A stretch of 12,231 bases of DNA from Octopus sinensis. Lineage: Eukaryota. Positions 345-12,231 of the stretch are shown in pieces. The stretch is taken from positions 1 to 12,231 of the forward strand of contig NW_021826546.1 of the NCBI RefSeq assembly GCF_006345805.1, in the 5' to 3' direction. The notes beneath the pieces are model-generated. The model had not been told where the DNA came from, searched no databases, and saw only the letters and a program-made list of their open reading frames with translations. The position numbers were made by a program, and so were the translations under genes. Position 1 is the stretch's first letter; the number at the start of each line of letters is the position of its first letter.

Positions 345-1443
345 ACAAAACCAGTGTTTTCGGAGATTTAATCAATGAGATTTAAGCAACGAAATCCTGA
401 AGATACTATTAACACTAATGAATTCACAGAATCGATTTCTTCCAAAAATTTGAATAATGTCTAAAAGAATTAATATCATTGTTCTTGTATCTAACACGCT
501 TCATGCTCGTTGTAGTCAATTGGGAGGAAAAGTATATAGGTGTAATTCTTCAAATACTAGTTTTTCTTCTCCGACTGGGTGCCCTCTCTGGAAAAATACT
601 GCATACCGTAAATCCTCGAGTATAATCCGCAATTTTTCCCCAAAATTTAAAGGTCAAAATCCCTAGTACGTACTATATACGAGGTAAAAATGAAAAATAT
701 TTTCTAAGCAATCTCCGAGTCTCTATTTGCCGTCCGGCAATGTTTATTCAGACGAATTTTGTGATGTCAATCACCCATTACCTGCAGTAAGCAACATTTA
801 TTAAACGTTATTACTGTTATTACTGTTATTTCTGTATTTTCTGCAAACAAAATGCACAAAAAAATGCTACACATTTGCATTATGTTATATATACAATAAT
901 AATAAAGGACGTTACTGTACACATTTTTACAAACCAAAGACATTATATAGACCTCCTTGACTCAAGTTAGAGAAGGGGTGCGTATTATACACAGGGTTTA
1001 GGTTTTTCAGAGGTACAGCCCCCTAAAAATCCCCTGCGTATTATACTCAAGGGTGGACTATACTCAAGGATTTACGGTATGTACGGAAAAGGCTCTTAAT
1101 AGAAGGAGATGTTACAAAGCTTTCACTACAGACATTTTTTAAAAAATACGATTTAATGTGCACAGAGATTCCTTTCCGAGACCAAGCCTTGTGCATTTAT
1201 TTCGTAAGCGGAGCACGCCTGGAATTTAATTCTAAAGGCCTTGGTTTCAAACTTGAATGGAAATGTCTTAATTCGGTGCAACCTTGGCAGGGACGTAGGC
1301 ACAGTTGTCGTATGTGTATTCGAAGGACTCTGGAAATTCTGGTGGTAGACAAACATTTGTTAAATAGAAAGAACGAAGTGTTAATCACCTGCAATCACAA
1401 ATTGCTAAAAACCTTCAAATATTACAAGATACATATAAAATAT
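345..1443 (+). pseudogene. Decayed Penelope-like element 3' ORF (linker plus GIY-YIG endonuclease region), split by a MITE
   Basis: ORF 1156 reads FKLEWKCLNSVQPWQGRRHSCRMCIRRTLEILVVDKHLLNRKNEVLITCNHK, matching the PLE GIY-YIG C-terminal pattern W-I-..PY..CxLC..EKLxI..LLNKRxE..CxH. A frameshifted AEHAWNL lies just before it (cf. SKHIWEL). ORF 457 gives RCN...GCPL before the MITE (cf. CNC..CPLxGKC). Confidence 0.7.
606..1077. mobile_element. Non-autonomous Tc2/pogo-like DNA transposon (MITE), 472 bp
   Basis: 23-bp TIRs: CCGTAAATCCTCGAGTATAATCC (606-628) versus the reverse complement of 1055-1077, 21/23 identical. TA target duplication at 604-605 and 1078-1079. CCGTA termini are typical of Tc2-type elements. 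Confidence 0.9.
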
Positions 1444-1744
1444 TGTTTGTTCCTTCTCGAGCCATGTGTGGCTCATCAGGGCCGGTCTCCCGGTTTCCTT
1501 GGCGTATAGGTTCCCCACCTGGATGTGACGCCAGTCCGTTGCAGGTGAGCTGCAAGATGCAGGAGGAAAGAGTGAGAGAAAATTGTGGCGAAAGAGTCAG
1601 CAGAAGTTCGCCATTACCTTCTGCCAGAGCCGCGCGGGGCTTAGGTGTTCCGCTCATAAACACACACATCACCCGGTCTCAGATTCGAACCCGCGATACC
1701 TCCACCGCGAGTCCGCTGCTCTAACCACTAGGCCATGTGCCTCC
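1444..1744 (-). mobile_element. Full-length tRNA-derived SINE with target-site duplication
   Basis: On the minus strand: A box TGGCCTAGTGGTT, B box GGTTCGAATC and an AACAAACAA tail. Flanked by the direct repeat ATATAAAATAT (1433-1443 and 1745-1755). Confidence 0.9.
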
Positions 1745-2078
1745 ATATAAAATATGATGACTTGTAATCACATCCCCCCCCTTTTTTTTATCGCGGTTGG
1801 GCATAAAATTTATGGATGTAACTCCGTCTCAATTTATTAACTAGAATTTTCCCGGAATTACATCTAGTAACTCCTTAATCCTCTGTTTCCTTCCATTAAC
1901 TATTTTTCTGGGTAATGATTTATTGTTGTGTATTTGTCCGCATTTTGATTTCCATGAAGAAATCGGACGAAGAGGTTGGGCCATTCTTTTATACGCTTTA
2001 CTGTATTTGTTTAATTCATCATATATTTAATATCATGTAATTGGATTGACATACGATGTGGCCGTCGATGTTAAAGTT

Positions 2079-2113
<35 letters not shown>

Positions 2114-2134
2114 TATACATATATATATAGGGAG

Positions 2135-2328
2135 AGTTTACGAAAAAAGAAAAGACGAAGACAGGTGGTGTACAAAGCAATCAGATGTATTAGTATAACG
2201 CTCAGGAACAGAAAAAAGTCTTTACGATTTCGAGCCTACGCTCTTCTACAGAAAGGGACACAGAAAAAGCAAGGACATAAACAAGGAGAGAAAAATGTGT
2301 GTAGTGGCTAACGATCTATCATGGCGAC
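2135..2328 (-). mobile_element. Short dispersed repeat, probable PLE terminal repeat (pLTR) with a relic hammerhead-like motif
   Basis: 2135-2261 aligns in inverted orientation with 8298-8413. The minus strand contains CTTT-CTGTAGA-A-GAG cgtagg CTC-GAAA-tcg-TA-AAG. Confidence 0.55.
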
Positions 2329-2772
2329 TGATATATATATATATGATACCTGCATGCGTGTGTCTTATATATTCGTGAATAGTATATGTATATTTATGAG
2401 CGCATATATGTGTGTATACATGAATATATGTGGGTGTCTATGTATGTACATAAACCTGTGTGCGTGTGTATGTTTGTGTGTTTTGTGTTGGTGGGGATAT
2501 TATGTGTGTGTACGTGAGTGTGTGTGTTTGTGAGTGTGTGTGTGGGGGTATGTGTGGGTGTATAAGTGTGTGTGTTGTATTTATCAGGGGTTCATACACA
2601 GACCCATATACACACACCAGACTAAACTCTGGGATCAATGAAAAACGGCTCATGCATTCAAACACAAGCACATATATACACACACACATAGAGACGTGCA
2701 CACACACACACACACACATACTCACACCATTCTGACCTCTTAGACCATATACGTATATATATATATATATAT
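2329..2772. repeat. Compound low-complexity (TA)/(TG)/(CA) tract
   Basis: A TG-rich half is followed by a CA-rich half. The ORFs here are V/C/Y/H/T-rich artefacts. Confidence 0.85.
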
Positions 2773-3239
2773 ACTACCAAACAAACATTATTTTTATTGA
2801 ACTCAAAATACTTATTGTGTTCCCTTCCTTGAATACGTTCATGTAAACTGTTTTTAACATTTTCTTATCATTATCAAAGATTGTATAATTGTATTTTAAT
2901 ACTTTTGTGATAACAATTTGTAACACAACAAAGCTTATACAAAGGTTTACATTTTACTTTTGATAATCTTTATCTAAAAAAGTGAAACCGGTCAAGTCTA
3001 TAAAGATCTCTAAAAGACATTTGCATTTTCAAACTTTCTTTCATATATATATATATATATATACGTTTAAATATTTGTTGTGCAAGATTTTTTATGTGAA
3101 GTCGTGTGTTGAAACAGATATTGTTGTATTTAGGAATGGTCATTTTGCCAGTTTAGCCAATAAAAACACACGCACTATATATTTGGTATTACTTTGCTTT
3201 AGTGTTATTTATTTTTTACATTAATCTTAATCTTATTTC

Positions 3240-3283
3240 GGCCAGAGTTCTTTCGTCACACTCCTGTGACCGCATCAGCGGTC
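3240..3283 (-). ncRNA. Variant hammerhead-like motif in the left foldback arm
   Basis: GACCG-CUGAUGC-G-GUCACA ggag UGUGAC-GAAA-GAAC-UC-UGGCC. A9 is replaced by C. Confidence 0.4.
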
Positions 3284-3694
3284 TTTGTATTCTTCTTACT
3301 TATTTGTGTCTCACCTTACTAACCGTCAGCCATTTTGTATTTCTATTGTATGTCTTCATTTGCGCATGCTTATATCTCTATGTGCGTTTATGTTTATTTA
3401 GTGTGTGTGTGGGGGGGATGCCTGTAATATTTGTATCTTCTGTTTATATATGTTCATGTAATTTGTAATTTTATATGTTCATGTAATTTGTATTTTGTAT
3501 TTTGTATTTTGTTTTTTGTTTTTGCTGTTTTTGTTTATTCTTATTTTGTTCATGTGTTTACATCCACCCATTATTATCATTACATATGTTGTATGTATGT
3601 ATGTATGTATGTATAACAACAATACTAGTAATAATAAATAATAAATCGAAAAAAAAAATATATATACGTATATATATATATATATATATATACA

Positions 3695-3727
<33 letters not shown>

Positions 3728-3778
3728 CATATACATACACATATACATACACATATATGTATATGTATATGTATATGC

Positions 3779-3811
<33 letters not shown>

Positions 3812-4170
3812 TTTTCGATTCAATTTATTATTATTATTACTAGTATTGTTGTTATACATACATACATACATAATACATACATACAAGCATATGTAATGAT
3901 AATAATGGGTGGATGTAACCTACGAACAAAATAAGAATAAACAAACACAAAAAACAAATACAAAATACAAATTACATGAACATATAAAATTACAAATTAC
4001 TGAACATATATAAACAGAAGATACAAATATTACAGGCATCCCCCCCATGCACACACTAAATAAACATAAACGCACATAGAGATATAAGCATGCGCAAATG
4101 AAGACATACAATAGAAATACAAAATGCTGACGGTTGTAAGGAGAGACACAAATAGTAAGAAGAATACAAA

Positions 4171-4214
4171 GACCGCTGATGCGGTCACATGAGTGTGACG
4201 AAAGAACTCTGGCC
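4171..4214 (+). ncRNA. Variant hammerhead-like motif in the right foldback arm
   Basis: GACCG-CUGAUGC-G-GUCACA ugag UGUGAC-GAAA-GAAC-UC-UGGCC. Type I topology, 6-bp stem II, imperfect stem I, A9 replaced by C. Confidence 0.4.
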
Positions 4215-4343
4215 GAAATAAGATTAAGATTAATGTAAAAAATAATAACACTGAAGCAAAGTAACCCCATATATATTAGTGCGTGTGTTTTTATTGGCTA
4301 AACTAGCAAAGTGACCATTCTTAATACAACAATATATATATAT

Positions 4344-4414: not shown

Positions 4415-4855
4415 GGAGTGGCTGTGTGTAATTAGCTTGCTTACAAACCACATGGTTCCAGGTTCAGTCCCACTGCATGGCACCTTGGGTAAGTGTCTTC
4501 ACTATAGCTTCGGGCCGACCAAAGCCTTGTGAGTAGATTTGGTAGACGGAAACTAAAAAAAGCCTGTCGTATATACATATATATATATAATATATATAAT
4601 ATATGTTGTGGTGTGTGGTGTGTGTGTGTGTGTGTGTGTATAGGCTTGTGTGTCTGTGTTTGTCCCGCCCATCGCTGGTGTGTTTACGTCCCCGTAACTT
4701 AGCGGTTCGGCAAGAGAGACGATAGAATAAAAAAAGGCTTACAAAGAATAAGTCCTGTGGGGTCGATTTGCTCGACTAAAGGCGGTGCTCCAGCATGGCC
4801 GCGTCAGTCAACAGTAAAATGACTGAAAATATAAAAAATAAAAGAATAAAAGAAT
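4415..4855 (+). mobile_element. tRNA-derived SINE (octopus-type, CORE-like) with an internal microsatellite
   Basis: A-box-like TGGCTGTGTG, B-box-like GGTTCAGTCCC (4461-4471), CORE-like CCTTGGGTAAGT, an internal (TA)/(TG) tract and an AAAAGAAT tail. Homologous to 6448-6895. Confidence 0.9.
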
Positions 4856-6447: not shown

Positions 6448-6895
6448 TTTATCTTTCAAATCTCTAACTTTCTTCGGTCATTGGGCTGTGGCCATACTGG
6501 AGCCTCCCTGAGGCGGGGTGTTGGGGCAGTTAGTATAAACAAGATGACCCACGCACTTATTTTCTTAAGTCTGTCGTCTATTCAATCGTCCTCTTTTGCC
6601 GAACCGCTTGATTACGGGAATGCAAACACACCTGCACTGGTCGTCAAGCGACGGTGGGTGAGAAACACAAAGCAGGCCTTCTGCGCGCACACCCCCCCCC
6701 CCCACCCACACACACACCTGCATATTTATATACAGGACGGGCTCCTTTCGGTTTCTGCTTACTAAGTCCACACAGAAAGTTTTTAGCCAGCGCGGAGTTA
6801 TAGTAGAAGACGTTTGTCCGCAGTACCATGCAGTGGGACTGAACCCAAGACCACAGTGTTGTAACGCAACCTGCTTACCCACATAGCCATGAGTG
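6448..6895 (-). mobile_element. Older copy of the same or a related tRNA-SINE family as 4415-4855
   Basis: The minus strand reads TGGCTATGTGGGTAAG...GGGTTCAGTCCCACTGCATGG...AGCGGTTCGGCAAAAGAG...GCTCCAGTATGGCC, colinear with the 4415 copy. Confidence 0.85.
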
Positions 6896-7008
6896 TACCA
6901 GTTGTTCACTGACTGTTATTTTTTTTGCTCCGATGTAATATGTATTGTGTATATATTGGAGCTTACATTACAACCAATGAAACTGATATATATATATATA
7001 CATATATG

Positions 7009-7981
7009 TTTATCGGCCTCCTTAATTGGTATTTTTTCCTCGTCTTTTAAATTCTTTAGCGCGTGCCATTCACTCTTGCTGAAGTTTGATTTGTGTTTTA
7101 GTTTGTGTGCACGTTGTTATGAGTAATTCAAAATGAATTTATAGAAATTGTCAAGGGCTTTGTTCTTACATCTTGTTGAGGCATAGTTCCTGTTATTCCT
7201 TGCTATCGACTCGTCACGTTTGTTTTTGTGCGTCTTAATTTTCTATAGATTTCAGAATGTTTTTTTTTTTATTTCGTTGTAATTGTATCGTTGAGGGGGG
7301 TTGGCATGAATTTGAGCCCTTCAGAGAGTATGCAAATTTGTTTTGTTGTTAATTATTTGTTTGATGAATTAATGATTTCGATCATTTTTAGCTTCACACG
7401 AACGTATGATGCCACTGGGTCTCTCTCTTTCTGTGGACAAGGTCGAAGATATGGTTAAAGTAGTCAAGCTGATTGATGTGTAATTTACAGTGAGCATTTG
7501 TAGTATAGGACTGCTCGGTGTGTTTCAGTATTTCATGATCCATTGGTGTATTTCGGGGAAAATTTGTTGGTATTTTTTTTCAGTATGGCGGAGGTTTTTA
7601 ATTGGATTATTCAGTGAGCTTTTGAAATATAAGTTCCACTGGAATGTTTCAGGGAGATTTCGTTGATTGTTTCTCCTTATGAAGAGGTAGCTGTAATGTC
7701 GACCTCAAATTGCTATTTCTTATTCCAACAGACCCTTTTGCTACCACTCCCATCAACCAAAGAAATCAACAACCACCATCACCAACAGTACTACAGCTAC
7801 TGTCCCATCAACCACCACCTGCTTACAACCATTTTTATTAAAGGGCCATCACTGCCAACTAGCAAAAAGCAGAAGGTAATGAAATACAGTATCCTGTGAT
7901 CTTCGCAAGAAACATATGTGAACTTCTAGAATTGATATTGTGACATATGGTGTAATTATAAGCAGGGCGAATTTTAGCCAT
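7009..7981 (-). pseudogene. Decayed Penelope-like element ORF, N-terminal region preceding the RT core
   Basis: The minus strand reads LEVHICFLRRSQDT (~7930-7890), EIINSSNK*LTTKQICILSEGLKFMPTP (~7385-7295), SEIYRKLRR, KNKALDNFY and SNFSKSEWHALKNLKDEEKIPIKEADK (ending at 7009). These match, in the correct order, the PLE motifs HLxFLxRC, VINLS..LT..E..LLSKGLKFxPTP, FxRKLRL and SNLSKEE..ALK.LK.D..I.IKxADKG. Confidence 0.8.
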
Positions 7982-8013
7982 TTCTTCAGAGACTGAAAAA
8001 AAAAAAAAAAAAC

Positions 8014-8073
8014 GATGAACAGCCTTAATCGATTTTCGATCCTTATTGGGTTCTCATCAGAGGCGCCCACATC
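8014..8073 (-). ncRNA. Type I hammerhead ribozyme
   Basis: GAUGUGGGC-GCCU-CUGAUGA-GAACC caauaa GGAUC-GAAA-AUCGAU-UA-AGGC-UGUUCAUC. The catalytic core is complete and the G10.1-C11.1 pair is present. Stem I is GCCU/AGGC plus distal GAUG/CAUC, and helix III is the palindrome AAUCGAUU. Predicted cleavage is after UUA, between 8026 and 8025. Confidence 0.85.
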
Positions 8074-8297
8074 ATTTTGACAATATCCGTAAAAACAATC
8101 TGCCAATCTGTTTATATACTGAACAAATGTAGCAGTTTTTCTATGAAGGAATCCCTAATTTGCATACCGAAAGTGTTTAATTTCCCTCTATAAATATCAG
8201 CGTTATATATATATATCTATATATATATATCCACCTACCCACCGTGATTGACCGCAAGCTCCAAAAGTTGTTTTTTTTATTCTCTGTTTATTTCATC

Positions 8298-8413
8298 GTG
8301 TTCCTTTCTGTAGACTTGAAACGTAAAAGACTTTCTCACCTTCCAGAGCGTTAAACTAATACACCTGTTTGTTGTTTATACACCTATCTTCGTCTTCTCT
8401 TTTTGTGTAAATT
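8298..8413 (+). mobile_element. Second copy of the 2135-2261 repeat, with a 10-nt deletion in the hammerhead-like stem II
   Basis: CTTT-CTGTAGA-ctt-GAAA-CG-TA-AAAG at 8304-8329. The rest is colinear with the reverse complement of 2135-2261. Confidence 0.7.
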
Positions 8414-8479
8414 ACACACACACACACACACACACACTCACACATATATATCTATATATATGTATATATATACATTGAC

Positions 8480-8600
8480 CTGCTCGCTTAGCCAGCGGGG
8501 TGGCGTCATTTGAAGGCTAAAACAATGCGAAGCGCATTGTGACCAGCAATGTGTAACAACATCTGATAGCCTGGTCGGTCACGGTGATCACGGTGATATA
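8480..8600 (+). mobile_element. Terminal fragment of a repeat related to 5682-6350
   Basis: 8534-8569 matches the reverse complement of 5688-5722 at 33/36 positions. Confidence 0.55.
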
Positions 8601-8827
8601 TATACATACAAATACACATACTTATACAAACATATACACACATACACACATACAAACACACACACATATATATGTACATGTATATATACACTTATTCATA
8701 TACACATTTGTATCAATTTTTTATCATCTTTACATATCCTTCAACGTTATTGCTCACTCCTTGTCTGTTAAACCGTTTGCAAAACACTTTGATACGAAGA
8801 AATGAATTCTGGCTGCAGACAAATAAA

Positions 8828-8958: not shown

Positions 8959-9331
8959 AATTTGTCACATGACATTTGAAAAGATTCTCAGTGTTAGGGT
9001 GGGTAATGTTTAGGCTTTTTTTTTATGTTCCAGTCCAGTACTGCTAAACCATATGTTTTCGCTGGTATTGCAAACATGTTAATGACGCAACTGATTATTT
9101 ATTGTGGCTCTTAAATGAATATTTATAATTACTTTTTTCTATCAAAATATTTACTTCTCATCCTCAATGACACCAATTCCCGTACACAACTTTACTTGCA
9201 TCTGCACTCAAGGACATATAAAATGCTACATGGTTCTGATTCTGTAATATTTTCAATCCATGGAACTGAAAATTATCGCTCGACTTACGAATATACTTAG
9301 TTTATGTATTTATTTGTTTTTGTTTTGGGCC

Positions 9332-9950
9332 CTGAGCTCATCAGAAGGTGGTCTGCCGCATGCACTGAATGGGGTCGCTGCTAAGTGCAACAAGGCAGGG
9401 AGGAGAATAAGTGTTGCGAATGCTGAGACGTTGGTCTTCTCAAGAAAGTCTTCCCTGTGCACTTTGCATGTTAATGCAACACTGCTGACACATTTGAAGT
9501 TTAAGTATTTCGGTGGCATATCCACGAGTGATGAGAACCAAGTGACTGAATTGGATGCTGGAAATGCTGGTGCAGACACAGTAAAAGTGCCAGCTCCATC
9601 ATTCGATCCTCGGAAGATAAGAGGTTGGTAGAAAAGCCAGACTCGCTACTTTAAATTCGGTCTTTGTCTCTGTCTTCCTCAAAGATTCTGAATGCTAGAT
9701 AATGACCTAAAGAATACAACTGCTAATAGAAGCGACCGAAAAGAGATTCTTTCGTAGGATCTCTGGAGTATCGATACTCGATGGGGTGTATAGCTCGGAG
9801 ATCAGGGAGTCTCTCCCGGTCAGGATGCTACTTCTCCGTATTGAGAGGTCACAGCTCCGGTACCACGGATACATGATTAAAAGATCACAGGAAAGAATAT
9901 CAAGGCAAATTCTTCAAGCTGAGTAACCGGCGAAAGATCCTGGAGATATA
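9332..9950 (+). pseudogene. RTE-clade (Rex3/Expander-like) LINE fragment, RT C-terminal region, degraded
   Basis: LSSSEGGLPHALNGVAAKCNKAGRRISVANAETLVFSRK...KFKYFG, then after frameshifts EATEKRF/RRISGVSILDGVYSSEIRESL..LLLRIERSQLRYHGYMIK. This is typical RTE post-YADD and thumb sequence. Confidence 0.85.
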
Positions 9951-11384: not shown

Positions 11385-12231
11385 TTGGGTTGTTCAGAAA
11401 GGTTGTGCCGATTTTTAAAGGTAAGAAAAAGGTCAATAAATACTTGTCATTACATTTTTAATCAACCAAATATGAACCATTTTGTTGCACAATGCGTCTC
11501 CATCTTTCCTTTAACTTGAAAATACCCTCTTCCCAGAATTGAGGTGATTTCATGGCAAAGAATTCATCAAGGTATGTTTTTACGTCATCCAAGGAATTGA
11601 AATTTTTACCATTAAGACTATTCTGCAGAGACCTGAATAAGTGGAAATCCGAATATCTGGTGAATATGGAGGATGGGGTAACACATCCCGGCCGAGCTGC
11701 AGCAATTTTTGTCTGGTTCCCAAAGAAACGTGCGGTCTTGCATTATCATGTTGGAAAACAACACCCTCCTGTTGGCTAATTCTGGACGTTTCTCTTGAAT
11801 TGCTGCTTTTAACTCGTCCAGTTGTGTGCAGTATTTCTCAGAATTAATTGTCTGCTTACTTGGGAGAAGCTCATAGTACAGAATTCCTTTCCAATCCCAC
11901 CAGACACAAAGCAAGACTTTTTTTGGGGGTGAAGACCCGCTTTTGGGGTAGCTATGGGTGTCTCGTGTCGCTTACTCCAGGATCGCTTTCTCTGAACATT
12001 TCGGTAGATAATCCATTTCTCATCACCAGTTACAATTTGCTTTAAAAAAGGCGCGTTTTCATTCCGTTTATAAAGCGAATCACAGATAGAAATGCGATCC
12101 AAAAGGTTCTTCTCACTCAACTCATGTGGTACCCAAGCGTCGTAGCGATTTGTGTACCCAAGCTTTACCAGGTGCTCATGAACGACGGATTTTGATAGGT
12201 TGAGGCTTTCTGCCAATTCTCGGGTTGTGCA
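11385..12231 (-). mobile_element. Mariner (DD34D) transposon, mellifera-subfamily-like, running off the window end
   Basis: TIR-like TTGGGTTGTTCAGAAAGGTTGTGCCGATTTT at 11385-11415. Transposase motifs WVPHEL, TGDEKW, HDNARPH and PPYSPDI. Confidence 0.95.
11458..12231 (-). pseudogene. Mariner transposase pseudogene with three frameshifts
   Basis: Frameshifts occur at ~11920 (C5A7 run in GLHPKK), at ~11765 (before FQHDN) and at ~11652 (about 7 nt lost from YSPDIAPSD). The reconstructed end is DFHLFRSLQNSLNGKNF...WRRIVQQNGSYLVD*, with the stop at 11458-11460. Confidence 0.92.

What the first reader, a model, noticed from the sequence alone, without database searches (positions are those of the whole stretch)
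8014..8073. Type I hammerhead ribozyme with intact core and palindromic helix III
All conserved core nucleotides are present (CUGAUGA, GAAA, UH). Stem II has 4 of 5 pairs with a CAAUAA loop, and stem I has an internal loop positioned for loop-loop tertiary contact. Helix III is the self-complementary AAUCGAUU, weak as a monomer but suited to dimeric cleavage, as established for metazoan PLE and retrozyme hammerheads. It is far better preserved than the adjacent ORF, which hints at selection, although chance survival of 60 nt is possible.
Basis: partly seen in the sequence, partly recalled or inferred. Interest (0 to 1): 0.85.

Follow-up and report, generated by a model that had tools for sequence, protein, structure and literature searches.

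The report
Hammerhead ribozyme of a decayed Penelope-like retrotransposon
The 60-base motif is a genuine hammerhead ribozyme sequence of the kind that Penelope-like retrotransposons carry, sitting upstream of the broken remnant of one such element in octopus-like DNA; it is a new example of a known thing, not a new kind of thing.

Summary
On the minus strand, 8073->8014 reads helix I / CUGAUGA / helix II (4 of 5 pairs, loop CAAUAA) / GAAA / palindrome AUCGAU / U-A / helix I, with the predicted cut between 8026 and 8025. A relaxed type I descriptor hits once in the window and in 1 of 3000 shuffles.

About 630 nt downstream on the same strand lies the N-terminal ~130 codons of a Penelope-like element (PLE) ORF (7385->6988). 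It has three stops and a frameshift and ends at an (AT)n microsatellite; no RT or GIY-YIG part survives. Its full-length relatives carry RVT_1 plus a C-terminal GIY-YIG. All five that I examined have a hammerhead of the same build (GAAA, 4-8 nt palindrome, UH) 90-300 nt after the stop codon. One also has it 1.25 kb upstream of the ORF. Helices covary across these sequences.

The motif is therefore the pseudo-LTR hammerhead of a dead PLE copy. The host is probably an octopus, since window repeats match Octopus contigs.

Rfam finds nothing, but it also misses most of the relatives. Models built from relatives score the motif only 11-15 bits. Selection on this copy and cleavage activity are untested. 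It is a new member of a known kind, of low to moderate interest.

The parts
8014..8073 (-). Type I hammerhead motif. Helix I distal 5' strand GAUG 8073-8070; internal loop UGGGC 8069-8065; helix I proximal GCCU 8064-8061; core CUGAUGA 8060-8054; helix II GAACC 8053-8049, loop CAAUAA 8048-8043, GGAUC 8042-8038; G12A13A14 8037-8035; palindromic helix III AAUCGAUU 8034-8027; H17 = A 8026; predicted cut 8026/8025; helix I 3' strand AGGC 8025-8022, loop UGUU 8021-8018, CAUC 8017-8014.
   Evidence: Sequence read directly. Descriptor hit in 1 of 3000 shuffles. Second-best hit in the window to model R2, which was built only from relatives' hammerheads: 15.2 bits, E about 0.05.
8074..8203 (-). About 130 nt between the upstream (TA)n and the hammerhead. 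Inferred to be the 5'-truncated 3'-UTR of an upstream partial PLE unit, i.e. the pseudo-LTR.
   Evidence: Inference. In relatives the hammerhead lies 90-300 nt after the ORF stop. No EN-domain homology is found here.
8204..8230 (.). (TA)13.5 microsatellite, the likely upstream boundary of the PLE remnant.
   Evidence: Tandem Repeats Finder. Insertion bias towards microsatellites, with (TA)n preferred by Naiads, is described in PMC8557442. The relative L009 also ends in (TA)n just after its hammerhead.
7996..8012 (-). T17 run (A17 on the + strand), two bases 3' of helix I. Its role is unexplained.
7386..7995 (-). Spacer of about 610 nt between the hammerhead and the ORF start. Presumed to be the tail of the upstream unit plus the 5'-UTR of the next unit. 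No homology to anything fetched.
   Evidence: No blastn or tblastn match to relatives. The hammerhead-to-ORF distance is comparable in L008 at 1250 nt; about 340-500 nt is inferred for L005, L006 and L009.
6988..7385 (-). N-terminal ~130 codons of a PLE ORF, decayed. ATG at 7385-7383. GxKF motif (SEGLKFMPTP) from 7319. DKG-like motif (ADKH) at 7017-7006. Three in-frame stops and one frameshift near 7290-7220. Homology stops at the (AT)n.
   Evidence: phmmer against 1.84 billion representatives gave 107 hits at E<=1e-3, best 1.4e-16. Full-length hits have RVT_1 plus a C-terminal GIY-YIG. tblastn of all 107 hits maps only to 7376->6952. Motif scan. Motif names from PMC8557442.
6986..7007 (.). 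(AT)11 microsatellite at which the PLE ORF homology ends. The RT and GIY-YIG parts and any 3' pseudo-LTR are missing.

Best explanation
[quoted passage not shown] It lies in the upstream pseudo-LTR of a dead, truncated copy, probably in an octopus genome.

In a live element, transcripts that run through tandem units would carry one hammerhead per unit. Helix III is only two pairs closed by the palindromic tetraloop UCGA, so a single motif cannot hold the active fold. Two motifs would pair their AAUCGAUU stretches into one 8-bp helix III and each cut after A8026. This may need help from the element's own protein.

At this locus the partner copy and the RT/EN part are gone, so the motif is most likely an inert relic whose core has survived by chance.

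Shown: the motif, its rarity by chance, the adjacent PLE ORF remnant on the same strand, and hammerheads of the same design in related PLEs.
Inferred: the pseudo-LTR assignment, dimeric cleavage, and inactivity of this copy.
For: Motif and cut site. Descriptor hit in 1 of 3000 shuffles.

PLE ORF remnant:
- It lies at 7385->6988 on the same strand and gave 107 homologues, best E 1.4e-16.
- Homology maps only to that stretch of the window.
- The GxKF and DKG-like motifs are present and are named as PLE features in PMC8557442.

Hammerheads in relatives:
- All five full-length relatives fetched (L005-L009) have a hammerhead 90-300 nt 3' of the stop codon on the ORF strand.
- Each has GAAA, then a 4-8 nt palindrome (CUAG, CUAG, GUAGCUAC, GCGC, GUAC), then U and H.
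- L008 has the motif on both sides of the ORF, 1250 nt upstream of it.

Covariation over 8 distinct sequences, including the window's:
- 90% of cells are paired, against 61% when shuffled.
- 11 of 13 pairs show changes on both sides.
- 0 of 500 shuffles reach the observed score, and slid controls give 31-49% paired.

Independent detection: a model built from relatives alone ranks the site second in the window at 15.2 bits, E about 0.05.

Energetics:
- The monomer hammerhead fold is -3.0 kcal/mol with helix III and -6.2 without it.
- The minimum free energy fold is a different structure at -13.3.
- The 8-bp AAUCGAUU duplex is -6.1.

Literature:
- PLE hammerheads with a small palindromic helix III, and their dimeric action, are described in PMC4209133.
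- Protein-dependent cleavage of a PLE hammerhead is described in PMC11167929.
Against: - Rfam gives no hammerhead hit, even at E<=10 on 300 nt. The control shows that Rfam also misses four of the five relatives' hammerheads.
- The custom models score the motif weakly. R2 gives 15.2 bits. R3 gives 11.5 bits and does not report it at E<=1 over the whole window.
- No second copy of this hammerhead family, and no copy of the 630-nt spacer, could be found. The link between the motif and the ORF therefore rests on position, strand and analogy.
- The closest ORF relatives are only 40-45% identical.
- A remnant that keeps the 5' part and lacks the 3' part is unusual, because PLE copies are normally 5'-truncated.
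- Helix II has an A.A mismatch.
Confidence: 0.85

Rival explanations
1. The hammerhead belongs to a separate, non-autonomous element (a metazoan non-LTR retrozyme monomer or a solo pseudo-LTR of another PLE family). It merely landed next to an unrelated PLE fragment.
For: Helix II of 5 bp with a 6-nt loop and helix III of 2 bp plus a palindromic tetraloop resemble the 'canonical' invertebrate type I motifs of retrozymes (PMC7229834). The mussel contig L001 shows such hammerheads in a dispersed short repeat near a PLE. The 630-nt spacer has no detectable homology to relatives. The window is a mosaic of many repeats.
Against: There is no tandem repeat with a period of 150-450 nt and no second copy in the window. 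The motif is on the same strand as the ORF and at a distance typical of PLE units. The whole 1.2-kb block is bracketed by (TA)n on both sides. The relatives' own hammerheads have the same palindrome design.
Confidence: 0.1
2. The motif is a chance match to the hammerhead consensus in AT-rich repetitive DNA, with no ribozyme ancestry.
For: The bare core pattern is expected 0.27 times per window. Rfam is silent. The monomer fold is unremarkable, with z = -0.88. The custom models score it weakly. The first-stage scan looked at many windows.
Against: The descriptor with helices hits in 1 of 3000 shuffles. The perfect 6-nt palindrome between A15.1 and U16.1 adds a factor of about 1/64. The position upstream of a PLE ORF on the right strand adds a further factor of order 1/20 or less. 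My rough estimate is about 1e-6 to 1e-7 per window.
Confidence: 0.02
3. The motif is kept by selection as a working ribozyme for the host or for the element family, for example acting in trans as a dimer with transcripts of other copies. It would have outlived its ORF for that reason.
For: All core positions are intact, whereas the neighbouring ORF has three stops, a frameshift and a truncation.
Against: Sixty bases are a small target. With 10-15% decay, a 15-nt core survives in 9-21% of copies. Helix II carries a mismatch. There is no partner motif in cis. The other hammerhead in the window has a non-complementary palindrome (CCGG) and lies on the other strand. No orthologue comparison was possible.
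Confidence: 0.03

Closest known systems
Hammerheads of metazoan Penelope-like elements with a small palindromic helix III (Cervera & de la Pena 2014, PMC4209133; Drosophila, rotifer, shrimp and mosquito PLEs)
   Same: Type I topology; intact core; G10.1-C11.1; palindromic 15.2-16.2 plus loop 3; short helix I; position in the repeat that flanks a PLE ORF; predicted need for a dimer.
   Different: [quoted passage not shown] Helix II is 5 bp, not 6-8. The palindrome is 6 nt, longer than the 2-nt insertion in D. virilis. The host is a cephalopod, for which I found no report. Only one flanking copy survives here.
Canonical type I hammerheads of metazoan non-LTR retrozymes and satellite repeats (Schistosoma Sm-alpha, newt/axolotl, coral, mussel; PMC7229834)
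   Same: Helix II of 4-5 bp with a 6-nt loop. Helix I of 4 bp followed by an internal loop. Helix III of 1-2 bp capped by a palindromic tetraloop. Dimeric cleavage is established for the amphibian motifs.
   Different: It is not inside a 170-400 bp tandem repeat. It is adjacent to a protein-coding PLE remnant. The conserved loop 1/loop 2 nucleotides could not be checked against a reference alignment.
Poseidon PLE of Anolis carolinensis (PAc) hammerhead (PMC11167929)
   Same: A hammerhead in the pseudo-LTR of a canonical EN+ PLE.
   Different: In PAc the motif overlaps the ORF start, cleaves only when the PLE protein is added, and is dispensable for insertion in vitro. Here it lies about 630 nt upstream of the ORF, and nothing is known of its activity.
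Rfam Hammerhead_1 (RF00163) and Hammerhead_HH9 (RF02275)
   Same: The same catalytic core and type I connectivity.
   Different: No match, even at E<=10. Of five related PLE hammerheads, only L008's reaches 21.8 bits against HH9, whose gathering score is 52.

Membership tests
Hammerhead ribozyme, type I | Conserved core: C3 U4 G5 A6 N7 G8 A9, G12 A13 A14, A15.1-U16.1, H17 | tested here: met
   CUGAUGA at 8060-8054, GAA at 8037-8035, A8034/U8027, A8026.
Hammerhead ribozyme, type I | Three helices around the core, with helix I open and helices II and III closed | tested here: met
   Helix I is 4 bp + loop + 4 bp. Helix II is 4 of 5 pairs, including G10.1-C11.1. Helix III is 2 bp + UCGA, or 8 bp between two copies. 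As a monomer, helix III is destabilising (-3.0 vs -6.2 kcal/mol).
Hammerhead ribozyme, type I | Mg2+-dependent self-cleavage 3' of H17 | not testable with these tools
   Needs in vitro transcription of monomeric and dimeric constructs.
Hammerhead ribozyme, type I | Score at or above the gathering threshold of an Rfam hammerhead model | tested here: not met
   No hit at gathering or at E<=10 on 301 nt. Control: four of five related PLE hammerheads are also missed, and the fifth reaches 21.8 of 52 bits. The test therefore has little power for this subclass.
PLE-associated hammerhead (pseudo-LTR hammerhead) | Lies in the repeat flanking a PLE ORF, on the ORF strand | tested here: met
   The PLE N-terminal ORF remnant at 7385->6988 is on the same strand, about 630 nt downstream.
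PLE-associated hammerhead (pseudo-LTR hammerhead) | Palindromic positions 15.2-16.2 and loop 3 | tested here: met
   AUCGAU between A15.1 and U16.1. The relatives have CUAG, GUAGCUAC, GCGC and GUAC at the same place. Helix III cells are 100% paired in the alignment.
PLE-associated hammerhead (pseudo-LTR hammerhead) | [quoted passage not shown] | tested here: not met
   A9 is followed directly by G10.1, and helix II is 5 bp. Several relatives (L006, L008, L009) also lack these traits, so they do not define this clade's motif.
PLE-associated hammerhead (pseudo-LTR hammerhead) | A second copy in the other flanking repeat | tested here: not met
   There is only one CUGAUGA...GAAA core in the window. 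The element is cut off at (AT)n 6986-7007.
PLE-associated hammerhead (pseudo-LTR hammerhead) | Match to a covariance model built from hammerheads of related PLEs | tested here: inconclusive
   R2: 15.2 bits, E about 0.05, second-best hit in the window. R3: 11.5 bits, not reported at E<=1 over the window.
Metazoan non-LTR retrozyme | Tandem repeats of about 170-400 bp, each with a type I hammerhead and no ORF | tested here: not met
   No such period in Tandem Repeats Finder, no second copy by self-blastn and none in the repeat finder.
Canonical EN+ Penelope-like element | N-terminal domain with GxKF/Y and DKG motifs | tested here: met
   GLKF from 7319 and ADKH at 7017-7006. 107 homologues. Motifs named in PMC8557442.
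Canonical EN+ Penelope-like element | Reverse transcriptase domain and C-terminal GIY-YIG endonuclease | tested here: not met
   Absent from the window but present in full-length homologues. The window holds a fragment, not a whole element.

The most novel reading that the evidence does not exclude
Octopod genomes may hold large, unreported families of PLE hammerheads. This window alone carries two different ones within 5 kb: a C3-G8 motif with a 6-nt palindrome and a U3-A8 covariant with a CCGG palindrome. Some members, possibly this one, might still cleave as trans-dimers or be kept by selection after their ORFs decay.
Probability: 0.07. Interest if true: 0.5.

Novelty: new member of a known kind. 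Interest (0 to 1): 0.25.

Why it matters
It adds a cephalopod example to the known link between Penelope-like retrotransposons and hammerhead ribozymes. It also shows that curated Rfam models miss this subclass, so such motifs go unannotated in genome scans. The copy itself is most likely inert. It does not open a new question, but the family could be a convenient test of dimer-dependent or protein-assisted hammerhead cleavage.

Tried and rejected
- Rfam at gathering and at E<=10 gave no hammerhead hit.
- Exact-pattern scans for the motif found nothing in metagenome contigs, viral contigs or bacterial/archaeal genomes.
- A protein search with the spurious ORF that spans the motif, meant as a trick to find other copies, found nothing.
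- The word-indexed protein search with the PLE N-terminus found nothing. Only the exhaustive HMMER search worked.
- Exact look-ups of window ORFs to find the source contig found nothing on record.
- The mariner ORF did not identify the organism.
- Self-comparison for a second copy or an inverted copy of the motif region found none.
- Homology of the spacer or of upstream ORFs to relatives: none.
- tRNA-like SINE heads near the T17/A17 run: none.
- A third covariance model with the second hammerhead family added scored the motif lower, not higher.
- The retrozyme reading was rejected for lack of a tandem array.
- A bacterial-style terminator or promoter reading is irrelevant in this eukaryotic DNA.

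Full report
**Observation.** The window is AT-rich DNA (25-43% G+C) crowded with (TA)n, (CA)n and (ATT)n microsatellites and interspersed repeats. It looks like animal DNA rather than prokaryotic.

On the minus strand, 8073->8014 reads GAUG-UGGGC-GCCU / CUGAUGA / GAACC-CAAUAA-GGAUC / GAA / AAUCGAUU / A / AGGC-UGUU-CAUC. All core nucleotides of a hammerhead are present: C3-A9, G12-A14, A15.1-U16.1, and H17 = A8026.
- Helix II has 4 of 5 pairs, including G10.1-C11.1.
- Helix I has 4 pairs next to the core, then an internal loop, then 4 more pairs.
- Helix III is two A-U pairs closed by the palindromic tetraloop UCGA. Equivalently, it is the self-complementary octamer AAUCGAUU.
- The predicted cut lies between 8026 and 8025.

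**More than chance?** The bare core pattern is weak evidence: 0.27 are expected per window. A relaxed type I descriptor that also requires helices I and II and the U-H site hits once in the window and in 1 of 3000 dinucleotide shuffles. The perfect palindrome adds roughly another factor of 1/64 by my estimate. The distal stem GAUG/CAUC is not significant on its own. The single molecule does not prefer the hammerhead fold: the minimum free energy is -13.3 kcal/mol in another structure, with z = -0.88.

**Rfam.** There is no hammerhead hit at gathering thresholds or at E<=10 on 301 nt. As a control I ran the hammerheads of five related elements (see below). Four gave no hammerhead hit, and one reached 21.8 bits against HH9, whose threshold is 52. 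Rfam's silence therefore says little for this subclass.

**Surroundings.** Translating the minus strand downstream of the motif shows two fragments in different frames.
- The first is MIEIINSSNK*LTTKQICILSEGLKFMPTP...
- The second is ...ALDNFYKFILNYS*QRAHKLKHKSNFSKSEWHALKNLKDEEKIPIKEADKH.

They contain the GxKF and DKG-like motifs that Craig et al. name as conserved in PLE proteins (PMC8557442).

The word-indexed protein search found nothing. The exhaustive HMMER search of 1.84 billion representatives gave 107 hits at E<=1e-3, the best at 1.4e-16. These hits align to the N-terminal ~130 residues of proteins up to 817 aa long. Full-length hits carry RVT_1 in the middle and GIY-YIG at the C-terminus, which is the architecture of canonical EN+ PLEs.

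tblastn of all 107 hits on the window maps only to 7376->6952 on the minus strand. No RT or endonuclease motif exists anywhere in the window. The remnant starts at ATG 7385-7383, has three in-frame stops and a frameshift, and ends exactly at an (AT)11 microsatellite at 6986-7007. A (TA)13.5 run at 8204-8230 lies 130 nt upstream of the hammerhead. The block 8203->6990 is thus a 1.2-kb PLE fragment bracketed by TA microsatellites. The literature describes microsatellites as favoured PLE targets, with (TA)n preferred by the Naiad clade.

**Host.** The closest ORF relatives come from Mytilus (L001), Octopus bimaculoides (L002) and Octopus sinensis (L004). Several window repeats match the two Octopus contigs at 78-94% identity. 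The window is therefore very probably octopod DNA.

**Relatives' hammerheads.** I fetched five full-length relatives on short contigs (L005-L009). Every one has a hammerhead 90-300 nt after the stop codon on the ORF strand:

| Locus | Motif |
|---|---|
| L005 | CUGAUGA GCCC..GGGC (A) GAAA CUAG UU |
| L006 | CUGAAGA GGAC..GUCC GAAA CUAG UU GUAC |
| L007 | CUGAUGA (U)CUAU..AUAG(U) GAAA GUAGCUAC UA GAGU |
| L008 | CUGAAGA GCUCU..AGAGC GAAA GCGC UU GUAA |
| L009 | CUGAAGA GCACA..UGUGC GAAA GUAC UU AUAU, then (TA)n |

L008 carries its motif twice, at 80 and 3861, on either side of the ORF (1334-3568). That is the pseudo-LTR arrangement, with the upstream copy 1250 nt before the ORF.

All share the window motif's design: GAAA, a 4-8 nt perfect palindrome, then U and H. 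Helix sequences differ while staying complementary. On the model-guided alignment of 8 distinct sequences:
- 90% of cells pair, against 61% when shuffled.
- 11 of 13 pairs show changes on both sides.
- No shuffle of 500 reaches the observed score.
- Sliding the partners drops pairing to 31-49%.

The alignment was fitted to the structure, which flatters these numbers.

**Independent detection.** A covariance model built from relatives only (R2) ranks 8021-8065 (-) second in the window, at 15.2 bits and E about 0.05. A broader model (R3) gives 11.5 bits and does not report the site at E<=1 over the whole window. Model-based support is therefore marginal. The case rests on the descriptor statistics, the position and the shared design.

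**Mechanism.** Established knowledge (PMC4209133, PMC7229834) is that type I hammerheads with a one- or two-pair helix III and a palindromic loop cleave poorly alone. They cleave well when two copies form one extended helix III.

The energetics here are as follows:
- Closing helix III in the monomer costs about 3 kcal/mol (-3.0 vs -6.2).
- The 8-bp AAUCGAUU duplex is worth -6.1 kcal/mol.
- A competing hairpin, GAUCGA-AAA-UCGAUU (-4.3), would sequester G12 and A13.

In the one PLE studied biochemically, the hammerhead cleaved only in the presence of the element's protein and was not needed for insertion in vitro (PMC11167929). The biological role of PLE hammerheads therefore remains open.

At this locus there is no partner in cis and no coding capacity, so the copy is most likely inert.

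**Selection.** The ORF is visibly more damaged than the motif, but the comparison is unfair: about 400 nt plus a deletion are set against 15 constrained positions. With 10-15% neutral decay, an untouched core is expected in 9-21% of copies. Helix II already carries an A.A mismatch. No other copy of this family could be reached, so the inside-versus-outside divergence test could not be run.

**Rivals.**
- A separate retrozyme-like element next to an unrelated PLE fragment (0.10). Against it are the absence of a tandem array, the shared strand and the typical spacing.
- Pure chance (0.02).
- A selected or exapted ribozyme (0.03), which is untested.

**Verdict.** This is a real hammerhead motif of the PLE class in a dead octopod PLE fragment. 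It is a new member of a known kind. Its hints of selection and of tertiary contacts are unproven, and its interest score was too high.

Noticed in passing
window 2951-3002 (+), within repeat 2764-3050; L002 4539-4590: A second hammerhead-like motif of a different family: ACUU / UUGAUAA / UCUUU..AAAGU / GAAA / CCGG / UC / AAGU. It has the U3-A8 core covariation reported for Cercyon PLEs. The model built from relatives found it at 28 bits, E 1.3e-5. It sits in a ~290-nt repeat flanked by (TA)n on both sides. An 88% identical copy in Octopus bimaculoides keeps the motif. That copy lies 1.4 kb upstream of a near-full-length frameshifted PLE ORF on the same strand (L002 6019-8297).
   Followed up: partly
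window 7996-8012: An uninterrupted T17 run on the hammerhead strand (A17 on the + strand), two bases after helix I. None of the relatives has it. It could be a junction or 'tail' between PLE units, a slipped homopolymer, or the poly(A) of a + strand insertion. No tRNA-like head was found.
   Followed up: partly
window 3118-4335: A large palindrome: the segment is 89% identical to its own reverse complement over 1256 nt, with arm pairs up to 98-99% complementary around a TA/CA microsatellite core.
   Followed up: no
window 11618-12216 (-): Remnant of a Mos1/mariner-type transposase in two frames. The best database identity is about 75%, to ant, bee and metagenome mariners annotated as SETMAR-like.
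   Followed up: partly
window 9248-9923 (+): Two open stretches that look, by eye only, like the C-terminal part of a LINE reverse transcriptase (…AETLVFSRKS…, …FFRRISGVSILDGVYSSEIRESL…LLRIERSQLRYHGYM…). Not tested with any tool.
   Followed up: no
window 4423-4761 (+) and 6548-6883 (-); also 2127-2329 and 8310-8411, 8475-8626: Short interspersed repeats shared with the Octopus sinensis contig L004 in many copies, at 72-89% identity. One copy abuts the truncated end of the PLE ORF remnant.
   Followed up: no
L001 25007 (+), 32726 (-), degenerate copies near 12254-12420 and 19173-19366: The mussel contig carries canonical type I hammerheads (CUGAUGA GUC UUAUGUA GAC GAAAC GCGC GUC) in a dispersed short repeat. 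These look like the Mytilus retrozymes of PMC7229834. Their helix I 5' strand (UGAUAUGAGCGUCA) resembles the window's (UGAUGUGGGCGCCU) at 10 of 14 positions.
   Followed up: no
L005-L009: Rfam 15 fails to report four of the five PLE hammerheads at E<=10, and the fifth reaches only 21.8 bits against HH9. This subclass goes unannotated in routine scans.
   Followed up: yes
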